Shown here in pieces: positions 1,891 through 59,017 of a stretch of 64,000 bases of DNA. The stretch lies in sequence record MG752970.1. One strand, written 5' to 3'. Position 1 is the first letter of the stretch. Every line of letters begins with the position of its first letter. Below the pieces are notes generated by a model. That model saw only the letters and a program-made list of their open reading frames with translations. It was not told the DNA's origin and searched no databases. Position numbers and translations under genes: made by a program.

Positions 1891-2001
1891 TTATTTGTAA
1901 ATGAAAGGATCCTGTTTTCTGATTTGATCGCGAATTTTTTCAGCTTCTGTTTTTTCTTTTACAAAGAAAGACTTCAACCAGTTAACCAATTTTTGAATCA
2001 T
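1891..2001 (-). CDS. 36-aa peptide MIQKLVNWLKSFFVKKKTEAEKIRDQIRKQDPFIYK
   Basis: Own translation; fills the gap exactly, with ATGA overlap to the upstream gene. Confidence 0.7.
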   Translation of the reverse strand: MIQKLVNWLKSFFVKEKTEAEKIRDQIRKQDPFIYK

Positions 2002-2849
2002 AGCAAATTTTCCTTATTCTGTATGCACGCAATTAGTGCGTCCGCCCATGCCTTGTGCGCTTCTTCAAGAGGATGATAATTAGGTCCAATAGGATATTGT
2101 TTTCTAATTGACCATGATCCAAAGTCAGTGGACCACATTGACTTTGTTTTGTTGAGAAGCTCTTCATTGTACATAAGCCATTTGGACATATCGATGGCTT
2201 TATACAATGGGTGATCTACTAATTGAATTCTGTCGTTATGCTCCACGCTGAGCATCGTCATTGGAATGCCCTCGCATAACGCATATTTTACTCCAACCGA
2301 TTTCAAAAAGCTTTGCATTTGCAAAATATTCATCAAAGCTTCTATTGCAACTGATTTAGGAGCAACGAAATTTTCCAGGTATAAATCTGCAAATTCGTTA
2401 TAGTGTTTTTCAGGACCACCATATTTTAGAGTTAAAAAGAGATCAATCCAATTTTCCTTTTTGGAATCATATAATCCCAATCTCAACATGTTTGTAAAAC
2501 TAATTACCACGAATATGTTTTCCGGTTTTACACCAAGTTGAAGCATAGAATTTATATGCGTCAATGTTACTCTGAATATTCGATGATTTGACGATCCACC
2601 CTGCGCGGCGTTAAAGAAGATGTGATCAGAAAATAGAGCCGAGTGCATGTGACCAGCCCAACATCTCTTCAATCTTTCATGATGATAATCTTGTGGAAGA
2701 AAATCAAAATGATTGAAGACATCTGTATATTCTGAAATTCCACACAGCTCTTGTCCGTACGTCATGGAGCAACCATTAACATAAAAGACCTTACTATCCG
2801 GAGTAAGGTCCTTCTCTAGTTCGCTGTATAGTAAATAGTCCTTACTCAT
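1998..2849 (-). CDS. SGNH/GDSL-like protein (paralogue 2)
   Basis: NGCSMTYG, GGSSN, YHPLEEAH motifs. Confidence 0.7.
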   Translation of the reverse strand: MSKDYLLYSELEKDLTPDSKVFYVNGCSMTYGQELCGISEYTDVFNHFDFLPQDYHHERLKRCWAGHMHSALFSDHIFFNAAQGGSSNHRIFRVTLTHINSMLQLGVKPENIFVVISFTNMLRLGLYDSKKENWIDLFLTLKYGGPEKHYNEFADLYLENFVAPKSVAIEALMNILQMQSFLKSVGVKYALCEGIPMTMLSVEHNDRIQLVDHPLYKAIDMSKWLMYNEELLNKTKSMWSTDFGSWSIRKQYPIGPNYHPLEEAHKAWADALIACIQNKENLL

Positions 2850-34725: not shown

Positions 34726-35273
34726 ATTTTTAGATTATAGGTTTTAACTATGTCAGGAAATTCGCCGAAGCTTACGTACTCTTGGATTTTATCTCTAAGA
34801 TGCGAGCTTCCTTCCATAGTATTGAAAGTTCGCGTATCATCAGTCCAAATAATATCCTTTCCATATTCTAAGCAGAACATGTAGAATTCAAATGCACGAT
34901 ACAGGAAAATGTTTACCGTAACGTCAATGAATGCTTTAGGATTTTGTCGGCTTTCCATGATTTTAACCATCGAAGCTGCAGCACCTATCAGATTGCGACG
35001 AGAAACAAAGTAATCAGATTGCTGGAGAATAAGGTGATGAGCGCTGTGATCTAGAATAACGTAATCGTCTCTACGATCATAGTAGTCAATCACATCCATG
35101 AATGACGTTGATTCTACGGCAGGTCCTTTATACTCATGCCACGCTGATTTTGGACCTGAATATCCTCTCCAATTCCCATCGATAATCTGATTTCCAAATT
35201 TGAGACCCAATTCCTTTGCTTTTTCTACACAAAAGATTGTACTAGCTGATCGCTGAGTTGCAGATACTATCAT
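34722..35273 (-). CDS. Hypothetical protein, weak sulfotransferase-like N-terminus
   Basis: TQRSAST resembles the 5'-PSB loop; apparent paralogue of 35270-35737. Confidence 0.45.
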   Translation of the reverse strand: MIVSATQRSASTIFCVEKAKELGLKFGNQIIDGNWRGYSGPKSAWHEYKGPAVESTSFMDVIDYYDRRDDYVILDHSAHHLILQQSDYFVSRRNLIGAAASMVKIMESRQNPKAFIDVTVNIFLYRAFEFYMFCLEYGKDIIWTDDTRTFNTMEGSSHLRDKIQEYVSFGEFPDIVKTYNLKI

Positions 35274-35737
35274 GATACTTTCAATCCGTATGCGTCAATA
35301 ATGGGCTTGAGATATCCAGCATTCTTGTCAATGAAGAATTTCAGTTTGTCTACGACGAATGGATCGATTGCGTGCTTGCATTCATGCCATTCAACCCACA
35401 CATTTTTAGTGTAGCAATAGATGAGAAAGTTGAAGAACCGAGAGATTTCAAGCTTCAGATATCCTTCAGCAGCCTCAACGCCTAGCAAGATGACATACGC
35501 GTTGTATTCTTCAGTTAGAGCTGCAGCGACGTCCTTTGTACCAACGTAAACATCGGCTACAGATAGAGCTGCAATATTATTGCTGAAATCCATGAAGACA
35601 CAATTCTCATCATTGAATTTTTCAATGCGTTCCTTGATACTGCTACCGGGGGAATTCTTAACGATACAATACGAATTCGCACGAGCATGTTCTTCAATGC
35701 TCTTCGTTCCAACATGACACATGAGACTTACTTTCAT
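35270..35737 (-). CDS. Hypothetical protein, paralogue of 34722-35273
   Basis: Shared RxFxFxxxCxxxxxxxxW and C-terminal YxLK patterns. Confidence 0.45.
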   Translation of the reverse strand: MKVSLMCHVGTKSIEEHARANSYCIVKNSPGSSIKERIEKFNDENCVFMDFSNNIAALSVADVYVGTKDVAAALTEEYNAYVILLGVEAAEGYLKLEISRFFNFLIYCYTKNVWVEWHECKHAIDPFVVDKLKFFIDKNAGYLKPIIDAYGLKVS

Positions 35738-36165
35738 AGTTCCTCCAGCGCTTTGATTACCATTTTTCGTGATGCACTGATGCTCAATGTGTTATCTATT
35801 CGCACATCATAAATGAGTGGAGGAACCCACATTGAATTGGTATCCTCAAATCTACTTTCCTTGATTCTATCCATCCACACAACAAAAGCAGACCCAAATG
35901 CATTTCTACATTCGGGTCTCGGGCAAACAAAGTCCGCAATAACCGGCGTATTTGTGGTGAGAACTTGATCACAAAGCCAGCGCATTCTCCTAGCTTGTTC
36001 AATTCGATCATCAAGACTAAAACCCAAATCCTTATTTAGGTTCTGTCTGACTCCATCGGCATTCCAATGCACAGCACCAAGGAGACGCGCTAATTCTTTA
36101 GCCAGTGTCGTCTTTCCAGAGCCAGGAAGTCCCATCACTAGGATGGGTTTATTCAACAATTTCAT
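35734..36165 (-). CDS. Adenylyl-sulfate kinase-like P-loop kinase
   Basis: GLPGSGKTT, NADGVRQ..NKDLGFS..DR. Confidence 0.78.
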   Translation of the reverse strand: MKLLNKPILVMGLPGSGKTTLAKELARLLGAVHWNADGVRQNLNKDLGFSLDDRIEQARRMRWLCDQVLTTNTPVIADFVCPRPECRNAFGSAFVVWMDRIKESRFEDTNSMWVPPLIYDVRIDNTLSISASRKMVIKALEEL

Positions 36166-43954: not shown

Positions 43955-44389
43955 CTATTTCTTGGTAAGGAACATGTCGTTCTCAGTAAGGATTCTAAAA
44001 TTCCAACCATGCTGTGCACAAAATTGCTGTGCTGCTTCGAATTTTGCATGATTAATTGCTATAGCCGCAAGATCATATGCAGAAGATTTCTTAGTCTGCT
44101 TGACGTGCTTCATAGGTTTAACCTCGCATAGATCGCATTTTACGTTACCATCCTTGTCTTTGTACACTATAAAGAGATCCGGGATGTACTTGTGAACCTT
44201 TCCGTCAGTAGGTTTAATATACGGAATGCTTATCTCTTCTGATGCCCATCTGAGAATGTTTACATTGCTGTCTAGGAATACGAACGCATTTCTTTCCCAC
44301 GAACTCATGTAGCGTATCGTTGATGGATCACCTAGATACTTCTCAGGATGTTTCGGTACGAATGTTCCTTTTGCCGTTCCCATAATCAA
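43955..44389 (-). CDS. gp4: Head completion nuclease (T4 gp4/TnsA-like)
   Basis: PEKYLGD..IRYMSSWE, WASEE..IPY, YIPD, EVKP, NHAKFEAA, LTEND. Confidence 0.88.
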   Translation of the reverse strand: MIMGTAKGTFVPKHPEKYLGDPSTIRYMSSWERNAFVFLDSNVNILRWASEEISIPYIKPTDGKVHKYIPDLFIVYKDKDGNVKCDLCEVKPMKHVKQTKKSSAYDLAAIAINHAKFEAAQQFCAQHGWNFRILTENDMFLTKK

Positions 44390-45630
44390 CCAAATAGATC
44401 TGAAATGTCAGACTTAAATGAACTTGCAGTATCCTGTGCAATCGTTTTAATCTGACTCTGAATGTCATTAACCGTTGTATTGACACCGGCTACTGCCTGA
44501 TTAACCAAACCTTTAGCATCCAATAGACTGTTTTTCATCTGCGCTACTATAGGGGATATACTGGAATTAACAACACCGGATCCACCTGCTGCACCAAAAA
44601 CATCTGCTAGACTATCCAACCCAGTAGTACCACTTGAACCACCAGAGCTGCTCTCACTAGCGATTGCCGATTGAGATGGAAGATTCTGATTTTCAACTGG
44701 AACAATACCACCTGGGGTATTCCCTAGAATGTCATATGCTCCCCAGTTAGTCATAGGAGTTCCTGTAGGAGTTCCATCTAGCATTAGCAATGCGTCATAA
44801 CTGAATTGACACGTAATCATGTTACCCTGAGAGTCTTCATGATCTACCGTATCAAAATCAAAGCTCTCAATACGTGGATTAACGAACTGAAACACATTAG
44901 CTCTCTGTCCATTTGCATACACCTGAGTAATAGACAATGATCGCAGAACGTTGATGTTACCATTCTCTAATGGTCCTAAGCTAGCAGAGGATCCAAAAGC
45001 ACCTGGTGGAACAAATGACATACCACTATCCTCGTACATAATGGGATCAACTCCACCTCTAGAGATAGGTGAGTAAGCCTGTCTGTAAGCTTCAAAGAAG
45101 TCCATTACCTTATTCTGAATGTCATCGTAGAACGTCATGGACAATGGTTCATGTCTTATTGCACGAAGAACCTTCGTCTTGAAGTTGTACATGTTGACGT
45201 CTTCATACTCGAAACTAATCTTAGGACGATCAACCATCTTAACGACATAGGTAAACTCCTGACCTATTCTTTGGTTGTACGGATCATTGAAGCTGAACAT
45301 TACCTTGAAGATAAACTTCTGTTTTGGTGCGTAGATAAGAGTATCAGATGCATAGTTAGGTGCACCTGTAGTGTTATCCGTTCCTTGAGAGATAACACCA
45401 AACACCCCAGAGGTAGCAGAGTTGATGGCCTCTCCTAAAACATTCTGTCCTGCTTGTTTCAAAGCACCAGTAAAACCTGAACCACCATTCATTATGGAGT
45501 TGGTTATTGAACCAGCTGCTAAACCAAGACCAGAATCACGCATGAACTCATCTACCTGAGCTCCAAATGCCTGAAAAGCCTTCTGCTGTAGTTGAACACC
45601 TTGTCCACTTATAAAATCGGAGACGTCCAT
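44386..45630 (-). CDS. Tail tube/baseplate protein (T4 gp19/gp48/gp54 superfamily)
   Basis: PKQKF.F.V.F, VDRPKI, EPLSMTFYDD, NPRIESFDFD. Confidence 0.72.
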   Translation of the reverse strand: MDVSDFISGQGVQLQQKAFQAFGAQVDEFMRDSGLGLAAGSITNSIMNGGSGFTGALKQAGQNVLGEAINSATSGVFGVISQGTDNTTGAPNYASDTLIYAPKQKFIFKVMFSFNDPYNQRIGQEFTYVVKMVDRPKISFEYEDVNMYNFKTKVLRAIRHEPLSMTFYDDIQNKVMDFFEAYRQAYSPISRGGVDPIMYEDSGMSFVPPGAFGSSASLGPLENGNINVLRSLSITQVYANGQRANVFQFVNPRIESFDFDTVDHEDSQGNMITCQFSYDALLMLDGTPTGTPMTNWGAYDILGNTPGGIVPVENQNLPSQSAIASESSSGGSSGTTGLDSLADVFGAAGGSGVVNSSISPIVAQMKNSLLDAKGLVNQAVAGVNTTVNDIQSQIKTIAQDTASSFKSDISDLFG

Positions 45631-46243: not shown

Positions 46244-46248
46244 TCAAC

Positions 46249-46275
46249 AAGGGAGCTTCTGCTCCCTTTCTTTTT
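46249..46275 (+). terminator. Rho-independent terminator
   Basis: aagggagc-ttct-gctccctt plus T tract. Confidence 0.8.
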
Positions 46276-46310
46276 GCTAACTAGGCGACTAGTTAATCGC
46301 ATTTCACCAA

Positions 46311-46745
46311 CTAAATATCCACATCTGTACCGCAAGGTAATAGTGACCCCATGCTGTGGTTGGATGCAGACGAATAGCAGCATTCGCTTTGGTTCAAGCG
46401 ATCGGTAACGATTAAGACACGAGTTAAAAGCTAAGTTAGAACGCTCCTATCGATTACGAATCGATCGTAATCATGCGCGGGCTGGGAGTCTGAAGTGTAA
46501 GGGCACCAAGAATAAACAGGATAGCTCATAATCCATTCGTCGAGAGACGTGGTAGGTCACGAACCGAATTTCGTCCTGATAATTTACTGGCTAATGTTGA
46601 GGGTGTGGTGAGACTCGACTGATCTAGTCAGACCCTTAATCGAGTCGTCTACCTTTTGATTCGATTGCATTCTGAGAGCGTTTAACATCCTCTTGAATGA
46701 ATCTCTTAATATGGTAAGAGATAGCCCGCGCTGTATCCGGATGCT
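46311..46745 (+). ncRNA. Candidate large structured non-coding RNA (family unknown)
   Basis: No ORF of 60 aa or more; CTAAATA at 46311; three GNRA-capped hairpins; 9-bp long-range helix; predicted pseudoknot. Confidence 0.55.
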
Positions 46746-46751
46746 TTTGTT

Positions 46752-58362: not shown

Positions 58363-58744
58363 GGGAGAAAAAGTGAGGGTTGGATAACGTTTGGAAAGCA
58401 TCGGAAAACCTTGGATATGAGCGCGTAAAAACGAAGGCCTCACACTCACACAGGATAACACTCGGCCGTCTACAAACCATCCCCCTAATGCACATCTGTT
58501 CCTGTATGTACGAGGCCACTAATCCCGGAGAGTTTCGCCCAGAAAACTAAGGGGTCTGGAGGCATTTTGTGTATCGTTTCGATGATTTCATACCTCTGCA
58601 GACTTACCTGAGGTACTCAGAGATGATTCGTTATGCTTGTTGATGTGCACAGTATCGAAATGTAGTAGATGATCTGAGCATCGTCTGTATGTTTCGAGTG
58701 TTCCATATAGTGCCGGAACACTTTGCACACTATTCCATAGATAC

Positions 58745-58774
58745 ATTATACACTACTGGTTTCGAAATGTACAC
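58745..58774 (-). promoter_or_regulatory. Sigma70-like promoter TGTACA-17-TATAAT
   Basis: Perfect -10, 17-nt spacer; no convincing ORF downstream. Confidence 0.6.
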
Positions 58775-59017
58775 TTTAGGCACATTCTTTTCGAACTATG
58801 ATACAGAATTTCAACAATTATCAAACCCATGGCATATTGTTTCACAGAATTCCTAGATCATAGTCAAATATTCTACAGAATTTCGAACTAGGATCCCCTG
58901 TTACACTTTAAATTTCTACTATGTACAAAAGTATGGTACAATATTAATAATGGAAAAGGGACGTCCCTCGCCGGGCCCCTCCTTCTGGGTTCTTCTGAAT
59001 GTTTGGTATAGACCCAG

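What the first reader, a model, noticed from the sequence alone, without database searches (positions are those of the whole stretch)
46311..46745. Candidate ~430-nt highly structured ncRNA behind a late-type promoter
Seen: a 500-bp gap after a terminator, starting with CTAAATA (46311). GNRA hairpins: tacc-GCAA-ggta (46328-46339), atcg-GTAA-cgat (46401-46412), cgtc-GAGA-gacg (46538-46549). Perfect 8-bp stems: gattacga/tcgtaatc (46452-46472) and atctctta/taagagat (46701-46722). A 9-bp long-range helix pairs gcgcgggct (46475-46483) with agcccgcgc (46723-46731). An interleaved A-B-A'-B' set (agggt 46600, gactcga 46612, accct 46632, tcgagtc 46640) predicts a pseudoknot. Established: GNRA loops and pseudoknots typify ribozymes and large folded RNAs. 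It lacks the signatures I know for tRNA, tmRNA, RNase P or group II introns and interrupts no gene, so it may be an uncatalogued class.
Basis: partly seen in the sequence, partly recalled or inferred. Interest (0 to 1): 0.75.

Follow-up and report, generated by a model that had tools for sequence, protein, structure and literature searches.

The report
New two-copy structured jumbo-phage RNA
The gene-free gap holds a real gene for a roughly 410-base, intricately folded non-coding RNA that Ralstonia jumbo phage RsoM2USA carries twice, that matches no catalogued RNA family, and whose function is unknown.

Summary
The window is Ralstonia jumbo phage RsoM2USA (MG752970.1). The 508-bp gap at 46244-46751 lies between two convergent genes.

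The decisive evidence is a second, diverged copy in the same genome, at record about 58,452-58,883 on the minus strand, inside the tRNA zone. I aligned 87 base pairs in 14 helices between the two copies. Forty-six pairs changed on both sides, 4 on one side, and none is broken. Twenty-two G·U cells put the RNA on the + strand.

A related soil phage keeps both copies nearly unchanged, while the neighbouring protein gene gp82 is only 63% identical. Its substitutions are compensatory, wobble or in loops. A wastewater RNA-seq contig covers 46325-46732. It ends at 46325, seven bases after the TAAATAT promoter-like element.

Rfam 15, ARAGORN, a covariance model and nhmmer found no family and no homologue in XacN1 or nine other related jumbo phages. 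IMG/VR, metagenome and genome pattern scans gave only chance hits.

The "late" promoter label is unproven.

This scan earlier noted large multi-copy RNAs in RaK2-like jumbo phages. I confirmed that family in GAP32 but found no detectable homology to this RNA. Function is unknown; my best guess is a stand-alone, trans-acting folded RNA.

The parts
46249..46278 (+). Intrinsic terminator of gp262 (AAGGGAGC-TTCT-GCTCCCTT plus T run). It insulates the RNA gene from upstream transcription.
   Evidence: It is conserved in the relative phage. Copy B is preceded by three such hairpins.
46300..46319 (+). Promoter-like block CATTTCACCAACTAAATATC, with the -10-like element TAAATAT at 46312-46318.
   Evidence: Copy B has the same block as ATTTGAACTCTTAAATATC. 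NTAAATAT[CT] lies 24-43 nt before many ORFs and directly before a tRNA-Val. The RNA-seq contig ends at 46325, 7 nt downstream.
46325..46732 (+). The structured RNA, copy A, about 408 nt. The 5' end comes from the RNA-seq contig end. The 3' limit is the end of closing helix P6 and the point where conservation stops.
46325..46345 (+). H1: a hairpin with a conserved base (CUG/UAG) and a variable tip (UACC-GCAA-GGUA, 46328-46339).
   Evidence: In copy B the tip is GAGCAA-UCA-UUGCUC.
46351..46383 (+). H2: a 7-bp helix (46351-57 with 46377-83) closing a 19-nt loop, GGYUGGAUGYAGACGAAUA, identical in all copies except two Y (C/U) positions.
   Evidence: two pairs changed on both sides, one wobble change.
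46384..46411 (+). H3 (46384-89 with 46396-401) and H4 (46402-04 with 46409-11, invariant GUAA loop).
   Evidence: three of six and three of three pairs changed on both sides.
46412..46451 (+). Conserved junction UUAAGRCACGAGUUAAAAGCUAAGUYAG, possibly with a small internal hairpin. This is the longest conserved block between the copies.
   Evidence: In this block the relative differs from copy A only at 46427-28 and by a wobble-compatible change at 46437.
46452..46472 (+). H5: 8-bp hairpin GAUUACGA/UCGUAAUC.
   Evidence: four pairs changed on both sides between copies. There is also an independent U-A to C-G change (46454/46470) in the relative.
46475..46483 (+). P6, 5' strand of the 9-bp long-range helix that closes the 3' domain. 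It pairs with 46723-46731.
   Evidence: GCGCGGGCU/AGCCCGCGC in copy A against CACGGAACC/GGUUCCGUG in copy B. Seven of nine pairs changed on both sides.
46489..46511 (+). S1: hairpin (46489-91/46509-11 and 46495-97/46504-06) with a conserved loop URAGGG. The loop could pair with CCCU at 46633-36, a candidate pseudoknot with no covariation to test it.
   Evidence: four of six pairs changed on both sides.
46517..46578 (+). Px: multi-branch helix CAGGA/UCCUG (46517-21 with 46574-78). It encloses the conserved strand CUCAWAAUCCAU, hairpin S3 (46538-49, GAGA loop) and hairpin S4 (46560-73).
   Evidence: Px three of five, S3 four of four and S4 three of four pairs changed on both sides.
46587..46631 (+). 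Py helix (46587-91 with 46627-31) enclosing hairpin S5a (46597-601 with 46614-18), whose loop holds the conserved UGUGGUG.
46638..46699 (+). S6 (46638-46 with 46658-66) and S7 (46668-70/46697-99 and 46674-78/46690-94) hairpins.
   Evidence: the helices sit at the same place in copy B with almost wholly different sequence. There is an independent U-A to A-U change in S7 of the relative's copy B.
46701..46722 (+). S8: 8-bp hairpin AUCUCUUA/UAAGAGAU. The stem is invariant in all four sequences; the loop varies.
46723..46731 (+). P6, 3' strand.
   Evidence: The 46727 C to U change in the relative gives G·U.
46733..46751 (+). Variable tail with a weak hairpin and U run (GUAU-CCGG-AUGC UUUUGUU). It is probably not part of the functional RNA.
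   Evidence: Ten of 19 bases differ in the relative, against 15 of 408 inside the RNA.

Best explanation
Window 46325-46732 (+ strand) is a gene for a stand-alone, highly structured non-coding RNA of about 410 nt, from a family not in Rfam.

It has its own transcription unit. A terminator shuts off upstream transcription. A phage TAAATAT promoter-like element sits 7 nt before the observed 5' end.

The RNA folds into two domains:
- a 5' domain of five hairpins, with two long conserved single-stranded blocks;
- a 3' domain of nine helices, closed by a 9-bp long-range helix.

The phage keeps a second, old copy in its tRNA gene zone.

Inferred, not shown: the RNA works in trans through its folded shape and its conserved unpaired motifs, either as the RNA core of an RNA-protein particle or as a ribozyme. 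Given the phage's own 40-46 tRNAs, tmRNA and TilS, the job may lie in RNA processing or translation.

My probabilities: real selected RNA structure about 0.95; stand-alone trans-acting RNA about 0.6; a translation or tRNA-linked role about 0.15.
For: Structure
- A paralogue lies at record 58,752-58,861 (E = 1.7e-13), and the homology extends over the whole RNA.
- In the 5' domain, 31 pairs are 100% paired in 4 sequences and 12 pairs changed on both sides. Slid controls give 23-52% paired.
- In the whole RNA, of 87 pairs, 46 changed on both sides, 4 on one side and 0 are broken.
- Twenty-two G·U cells fit only the + strand as RNA.

Selection
- The relative's copy A has 15 substitutions in 408 nt and none breaks a pair. 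The next 19 nt have 10 changes.
- Copy B and its terminators are about 98% identical in the relative, whereas the adjacent gp82 is 63% identical at protein level.
- In run X1, the gap differs about 5% from the window against about 13% in the adjacent gp262 coding DNA.

Transcription
- The RNA-seq contig of run X17 spans 46325-46732 and ends at 46325.
- Four RNA libraries hold words of the stretch.
- The promoter motif is shared with many ORFs and a tRNA.

Non-coding and stand-alone
- No ORF is shared between the copies.
- Copy A has no downstream gene on its strand.
- gp82, downstream of copy B, has its own ATAAATAG promoter.
Against: - There is no direct experiment on this phage. The RNA-seq evidence is one low-depth contig (depth 3.7) from a 91%-identical relative in a metagenome, and DNA carry-over cannot be excluded.
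- The fold energy is only modestly better than shuffles, and the z-score is better on the other strand.
- Only two deep lineages (copies A and B) plus near-identical relatives are available. The covariation therefore counts essentially one ancient divergence, and four 3'-domain helices were aligned by hand.
- No homologue was found outside this phage lineage, so nothing points to a function.
- In copy B, and in the X17 relative, an ORF follows on the same strand, which leaves a leader role open.
Confidence: 0.6

Rival explanations
1. It is a cis-acting leader: a large structured 5' UTR or attenuator that controls read-through or translation of the gene downstream. Copy A would be an orphan that has lost its gene.
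For: Copy B lies about 50 nt upstream of gp82-81-80 on the same strand, with no terminator between them. In the X17 relative, the contig runs on 117 nt past the RNA into sequence that starts with ATG.
Against: Copy A is followed only by a convergent gene, yet it is kept under strong constraint in the relatives. gp82 has its own ATAAATAG promoter between the RNA and its start codon. A length of 410 nt with 14 helices far exceeds known leaders. The downstream genes in the three contexts are unrelated.
Confidence: 0.15
2. It is a DNA-level element, or a primer transcript for DNA replication (an R-loop origin). Earlier agents proposed this for the RaK2-like multi-copy RNAs.
For: There are two dispersed copies, each with a promoter, in a T4-related phage. 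T4 origins use promoter-driven R-loops (established knowledge).
Against: The 22 G·U cells and the strand-specific covariation indicate a folded RNA, not duplex or cruciform DNA. Neither copy coincides with a turning point of cumulative GC skew, which turns near 185 and 245 kb. R-loop origins need no conserved secondary structure.
Confidence: 0.05
3. It is an extremely diverged member of a known large RNA class, such as RNase P RNA, a group I intron-like ribozyme, GOLLD or ROOL.
For: The size (about 410 nt), the two-domain build, the GNRA loops and a phage with 40-46 tRNAs and a tmRNA that need 5' processing.
Against: cmscan with permissive filters gives no hit at E <= 10 to any such family in the RNA body of either copy. 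The 5' and 3' ends do not pair, so there is no P1. No CR-I/CR-V-like P4 strands are present. The RNA interrupts no gene.
Confidence: 0.05
4. It is non-functional spacer DNA whose hairpins arose by chance, or a decaying duplicated segment.
For: The MFE z-score is modest. The element is confined to one phage lineage.
Against: In helices anchored by conserved flanks, 26 doubly substituted pairs all stay canonical. The chance of that is about 0.375^26, roughly 1e-11 (my calculation). The gap is also more conserved than the neighbouring coding DNA.
Confidence: 0.02

Closest known systems
GOLLD and ROOL large ornate RNAs (Rfam; Weinberg et al. 2017, PMC5737381; cryo-EM preprint 10.1101/2024.12.08.627333)
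   Same: They are large, many-helix non-coding RNAs of unknown function. They are often phage- or prophage-borne and lie near tRNA genes. They are transcribed as their own units.
   Different: There is no sequence or structure match. This RNA is smaller (about 410 nt against about 580-800 nt). It comes from a proteobacterial T4-related jumbo phage and occurs in two diverged copies per genome.
Multi-copy large structured RNAs of RaK2-like jumbo phages
   Same: They occur in T4-related jumbo phages in several old copies per genome. Each copy has its own promoter, sits in an ORF-free gap, is 0.4-0.7 kb long and is absent from Rfam.
   Different: nhmmer in both directions and model R1 find no homology. 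GAP32 copies use a TGGTATAAT-type promoter and open with an 8-bp helix enclosing the first hairpin, which is a different topology. The only shared feature is a short local motif, AUAGU...GCAGAYGARUAG. By my estimate, a match of this quality is expected by chance.
Bacterial RNase P RNA
   Same: Similar length and a two-domain architecture. It would make biological sense in a phage with 40-46 tRNAs and a tmRNA.
   Different: There is no Rfam hit, no P1 pairing of the ends and no P4 or conserved CR-I/CR-V sequences (sequence inspection).
Phage T4 stable RNAs, species 1 and 2 (rnaD, rnaC), in the T4 tRNA cluster (from my own knowledge)
   Same: They are stable non-coding RNAs of unknown function encoded among the tRNA genes of a T4-type phage. 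Copy B lies in the tRNA zone.
   Different: The T4 RNAs are only about 120-140 nt and are processed from the tRNA precursor transcript.

Membership tests
Any Rfam 15 family (4227 models) | A covariance-model score at or above the family's gathering threshold | tested here: not met
   There were zero gathering-level hits in the window. No hit with E <= 10 falls in the RNA body of copy B, and copy A has only a 9.9-bit CsrC match, against a gathering score of 61. The whole phage genome yields only tRNAs and one tmRNA.
tRNA / tmRNA | A cloverleaf or tRNA-like domain with a tag reading frame, as detected by ARAGORN | tested here: not met
   ARAGORN finds none in the window. The phage's real tmRNA is elsewhere, at record about 331.6-332.0 kb.
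Group I intron | Interrupts a gene, with flanking exons that join into one ORF or RNA | tested here: not met
   The RNA lies between a terminator and a convergent gene's stop codon. gp262 is complete, with a full PLDc_2 domain.
Group I intron | A conserved P3-P9 core with a P7 guanosine-binding site (Rfam RF00028 and subtypes) | tested here: not met
   No hit at E <= 10.
RNase P RNA | A P1 helix joining the 5' and 3' ends, and a P4 helix from the conserved CR-I and CR-V strands | tested here: not met
   The only long-range helix joins 46475-83 to 46723-31, not the two ends. No RNase P model hit.
RNase P RNA | Cleaves pre-tRNA 5' leaders | not testable with these tools
   This needs an in-vitro assay.
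GOLLD / ROOL | A match to the family covariance model | tested here: not met
   No hit.
RaK2-like jumbo-phage multi-copy RNA (scan's own family) | Detectable sequence or profile homology to the five GAP32 copies | tested here: not met
   nhmmer with the GAP32 profile against RsoM2USA gives a best E of 4.1, away from both copies. The reverse search gives a best E of 14. Model R1 finds nothing in GAP32, CBB, PA5oct, XaC1 or a Vibrio jumbo phage.
RaK2-like jumbo-phage multi-copy RNA (scan's own family) | The same helix topology | tested here: inconclusive
   I compared only the 5' module. GAP32 has an 8-bp helix enclosing the first hairpin and the motif. Here, the helix 5' strand follows the first hairpin. 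The 3' parts were not compared.
Riboswitch / cis leader | Consistently placed upstream of a related gene on the same strand | tested here: not met
   Copy A has no downstream same-strand gene. Copy B precedes gp82, which has its own promoter. No family was found for any of the neighbouring proteins scanned.

The most novel reading that the evidence does not exclude
This is a new class of large functional RNA, either a ribozyme or the RNA core of a phage RNA-protein machine. It would belong to the self-supplied RNA and translation toolkit of T4-related jumbo phages, alongside their tRNAs and tmRNA. It may be a distant analogue of the multi-copy RNAs that this scan found in RaK2-like jumbo phages. 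If so, large structured RNAs would be a general and so far overlooked feature of jumbo-phage biology.
Probability: 0.3. Interest if true: 0.9.

Novelty: categorically new. Interest (0 to 1): 0.72.

Why it matters
Few large natural RNAs with many covariation-supported helices are known, and such RNAs have often turned out to be ribozymes or cores of RNA-protein machines, although several (GOLLD, ROOL, OLE) still lack a known function. This RNA has 14 supported helices and several strictly conserved unpaired motifs. It has its own promoter and two ancient copies in a cultivable phage of a crop pathogen, so genetics, probing and cryo-EM are directly feasible.

Together with the unrelated-looking multi-copy RNAs of RaK2-like phages, it suggests that jumbo phages rely on large structured RNAs that genome annotation misses entirely. 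The stretch is unannotated in GenBank, and the second copy caused a wrong start call for gp82.

Tried and rejected
Searches for a known family or for homologues, all negative:
- Rfam at gathering and permissive thresholds on both copies and the whole genome: only tRNAs and a tmRNA.
- ARAGORN on the window: nothing.
- blastn and tblastn against 50,697 phage records: only RsoM2USA itself for the gap and for gp263.
- Covariance model R1 (5' domain): only the two copies in the RsoM2USA genome. Nothing in XacN1, Xoo-sp13, RAS14, Phosso, SCTP-2, GAP32, CBB, PA5oct, XaC1 or Vibrio phage 2.275.O. Nothing in IMG/VR contigs carrying gp261 homologues.
- nhmmer of the A/B profile against XacN1 and GAP32: nothing.
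- Motif scans of IMG/VR, JGI metagenomes and GTDB genomes: chance hits only, checked. A 14-bit hit in L042 lies in bacterial coding DNA.

Hypotheses tested and dropped:
- Homology to the RaK2-like five-copy family: not detected.
- Replication-origin idea: no GC-skew turning point at either copy.
- Antisense targets of the conserved motifs in the phage genome: none with three or fewer mismatches.
- Hidden protein gene: no shared ORF.
- Pfam and PHROGs on the neighbouring proteins: nothing that suggests a protein partner for the RNA; the only matches are PLD-like (gp262), GNAT, TilS-like PP-loop, tail tube, head closure and a glycosyltransferase.

Steps I could not complete:
- More diverged relatives exist in runs X1 (92% identical) and X17 (91%). 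I could not fetch them: the variant table was cut off before the RNA, and read laying allows one call per session.

Full report
**Identity of the window.** The gap sequence matches only Ralstonia phage RsoM2USA (MG752970.1, 343,806 bp) at 100% identity; window position = record position minus 124,000. This is a T4-related jumbo myovirus whose nearest described relative is Xanthomonas phage XacN1 (PMC8504454; major capsid protein 51.5% identical).

**The observation.**
- The 508-bp stretch 46244-46751 is unannotated.
- It lies between gp262 (+ strand, PLD-like domain, E = 1.5e-21) and the convergent gp263.
- A terminator sits at 46249-46268. CTAAATA is at 46311.
- Base composition is like coding DNA, 44-46% G+C.
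- Folding energy alone is unimpressive: z = -1.9 on the + strand and -3.2 on the - strand.

**A second copy.** A search of the whole phage record found a 74%-identical match to window 46340-46451 at record 58,752-58,861 on the minus strand (E = 1.7e-13).
- This match lies in another unannotated gap, downstream of the TilS-like gene gp84.
- That gap falls within the zone that holds the phage's 46 ARAGORN-predicted tRNA genes (40 by Rfam), all on the minus strand.
- The homology extends over the whole element, from ATTT..A.C...TAAATATCYACATCTG to just past the long-range helix.
- Motif scans and covariance model R1 find exactly two copies in the genome, at 164 and 162 bits.

**Covariation.**
- RNAalifold on the 5' domain predicted 43 pairs, 16 of them changed on both sides.
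- On a gap-free four-sequence alignment (two copies times two phages), my 31-pair structure is 100% paired, with 12 doubly changed pairs. Sliding the partners by 1-3 columns gives 23-52% paired and at most 3 such pairs.
- For the whole RNA I aligned helices by hand, using conserved flanking sequence as anchors. Of 87 pairs in 14 helices, 46 changed on both sides between copies A and B, 4 on one side, 37 are unchanged and none is broken.
- The long-range helix is GCGCGGGCU/AGCCCGCGC in copy A and CACGGAACC/GGUUCCGUG in copy B.
- In the helices whose register is fixed by conserved flanks (H2-H5, P6, S1, Px), 26 doubly substituted pairs all remain canonical. I estimate the chance of that at about 0.375^26, roughly 1e-11.
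- Twenty-two cells are G·U. These would be A·C mismatches on the other strand or in DNA, so the + strand is the RNA strand.
- Caveat: the registers of S3, S4, S6 and S7 were chosen by me, and the comparison samples essentially one ancient duplication.

Copy B has no counterpart of AGGGU/ACCCU or GACUCGA/UCGAGUC. Both copies instead share three nested helices: UUGAG/CUCGA, CUGGC/GUCAG and a 9-10-bp hairpin. Two other tertiary pairings are possible but invariant, so they cannot be tested here: the S1 loop AAGGG with CCCUU at 46633-37, and the H2 loop UGGAU with AUCCA at 46533-37.

**Relatives and selection.** Sixteen soil and plant metagenome runs hold 20-48% of the stretch's 31-mers. I fetched the two loci of a related phage through gp262 and gp82 homologues.
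- Its copy A differs at 15 of 408 positions, and none breaks a pair. The changes include 46454/46470 U-A to C-G, three wobble changes (46379, 46437, 46727), and the GAGA loop becoming GCAA. Ten of the next 19 bases differ.
- Its copy B, together with three upstream terminator hairpins, is about 98% identical. The flanking gp82 is 63% identical at protein level, and the upstream ORF is visibly much more diverged, roughly two-thirds identical by eye.
- Copy B of the relative carries an independent U-A to A-U compensatory change in S7.
- In run X1, a 92%-identical contig has about 13% differences in the end of gp262, spaced by threes, but about 5% in the gap.

**Transcription.**
- NTAAATAT[CT] occurs 24-43 nt upstream of many ORFs, including the primase-helicase gene, and directly before a tRNA-Val.
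- Virion genes (portal, neck, sheath, baseplate) carry ATAAATA[GC] instead.
- The element is therefore a plausible phage promoter, but its temporal class is open.
- In a wastewater metatranscriptome (X17), a 524-nt contig matches 46325-46732 with 37 differences. It ends exactly at 46325, seven bases after TAAATAT, and runs on 117 nt past 46732 into unrelated sequence.
- Four RNA libraries from three studies hold part of the RNA.
- This is suggestive, not proof. Depth is 3.7, and DNA can contaminate such libraries.

**What it is not.**
- Rfam 15 gives no family hit in either copy's RNA body even at E <= 10; the only overlap is a 9.9-bit CsrC match in copy A, against a gathering score of 61.
- ARAGORN finds nothing.
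- No ORF is shared between the copies.
- The RNA interrupts no gene.
- The 5' and 3' ends do not pair with each other, unlike RNase P RNA or tmRNA.
- The phage's real tmRNA is elsewhere (beta_tmRNA, 92 bits).
- Neither copy lies at a turning point of cumulative GC skew.

**Distribution.** I found no homologue in 50,697 phage records by blastn. Model R1 found none in ten related jumbo phages. Motif scans of IMG/VR, JGI metagenomes and GTDB genomes gave none (with checks).

**Relation to earlier findings of this scan.** Earlier notes describe undescribed RNAs of 0.45-0.69 kb in four or five copies in RaK2-like jumbo phages.
- I confirmed a five-copy family in GAP32, at record gaps 35091, 98711, 177397, 261382 and 340681.
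- Profile searches in both directions find no homology to the RsoM2USA RNA.
- The 5' topology differs.
- The only resemblance is a short local motif. By my estimate, a match of this quality is expected by chance.
- I therefore treat the two families as parallel cases, not one family.

**Mechanism.**
- Shown: a conserved two-domain fold, an insulated transcription unit, two ancient copies, and stronger constraint than on the neighbouring genes.
- Inferred: a stand-alone trans-acting RNA that works through its fold and its conserved unpaired motifs. These motifs are GGAUGYAGACGAAUAG, CACGAGUUAAAAGCUAAGU, URAGGG, AUAAAC, CUCAWAAUCCAU, GAUAAUU and UGUGGUG.
- A link to the phage's own tRNA and tmRNA toolkit is a guess (about 0.15).
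- A leader role for copy B cannot be excluded. It fits poorly with copy A, which has no downstream gene, and with gp82's own promoter.

Noticed in passing
outside the window: MG752970.1 about 331,649-331,960, minus strand (L026 14849-15160): The phage encodes a genuine tmRNA (Rfam beta_tmRNA, 92 bits against a gathering score of 84; ARAGORN also calls it). The genome paper does not mention a tmRNA.
   Followed up: partly
outside the window: MG752970.1 58,403-58,508 (L009 about 1904-2009, minus strand): The annotated start of gp82 (RsoM2USA_82) is probably wrong. Its ATG lies in a hairpin loop of RNA copy B and is absent in the relative, whose protein is 178 aa. The true start is the ATG near 58,403, behind its own ATAAATAG motif.
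   Followed up: yes
outside the window: MG752970.1 59,076-59,380: gp83 is annotated on the + strand. The related phage has a 91-aa ORF on the opposite strand over the same DNA (L061 2012-2287), so the strand call may be wrong.
   Followed up: partly
outside the window: MG752970.1 about 59,040-58,915, minus strand: Three tandem terminator-like hairpins, each followed by a T run, stand directly upstream of RNA copy B. They are almost unchanged in the relative.
   Followed up: partly
whole genome; in the window, for example 48164 (-) and 48179 (+): There are two promoter-like motif classes. ATAAATA[GC] lies 28-57 nt before portal, neck, sheath and baseplate genes. NTAAATAT[CT] lies 24-43 nt before many other ORFs, before a tRNA-Val and before both RNA copies.
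   Followed up: partly
window 43955-45630: gp260 matches the head-closure family phrog_218 (E = 1.3e-44). gp261 (414 aa) matches the tail tube family phrog_4542 (E = 1.8e-14). Virion genes therefore abut the PLD-like gp262 and the RNA gene.
   Followed up: no
GAP32 JN882285.1 gaps 35091-35804, 98711-99364, 177397-178397, 261382-261769, 340681-341209: This five-copy structured-RNA family has an 8-bp opening helix with covariation. It shares only the local pattern hairpin-AUAGU...GCAGAYGARUAG with the RsoM2USA RNA. Whether that is remote homology or chance is unresolved.
   Followed up: partly
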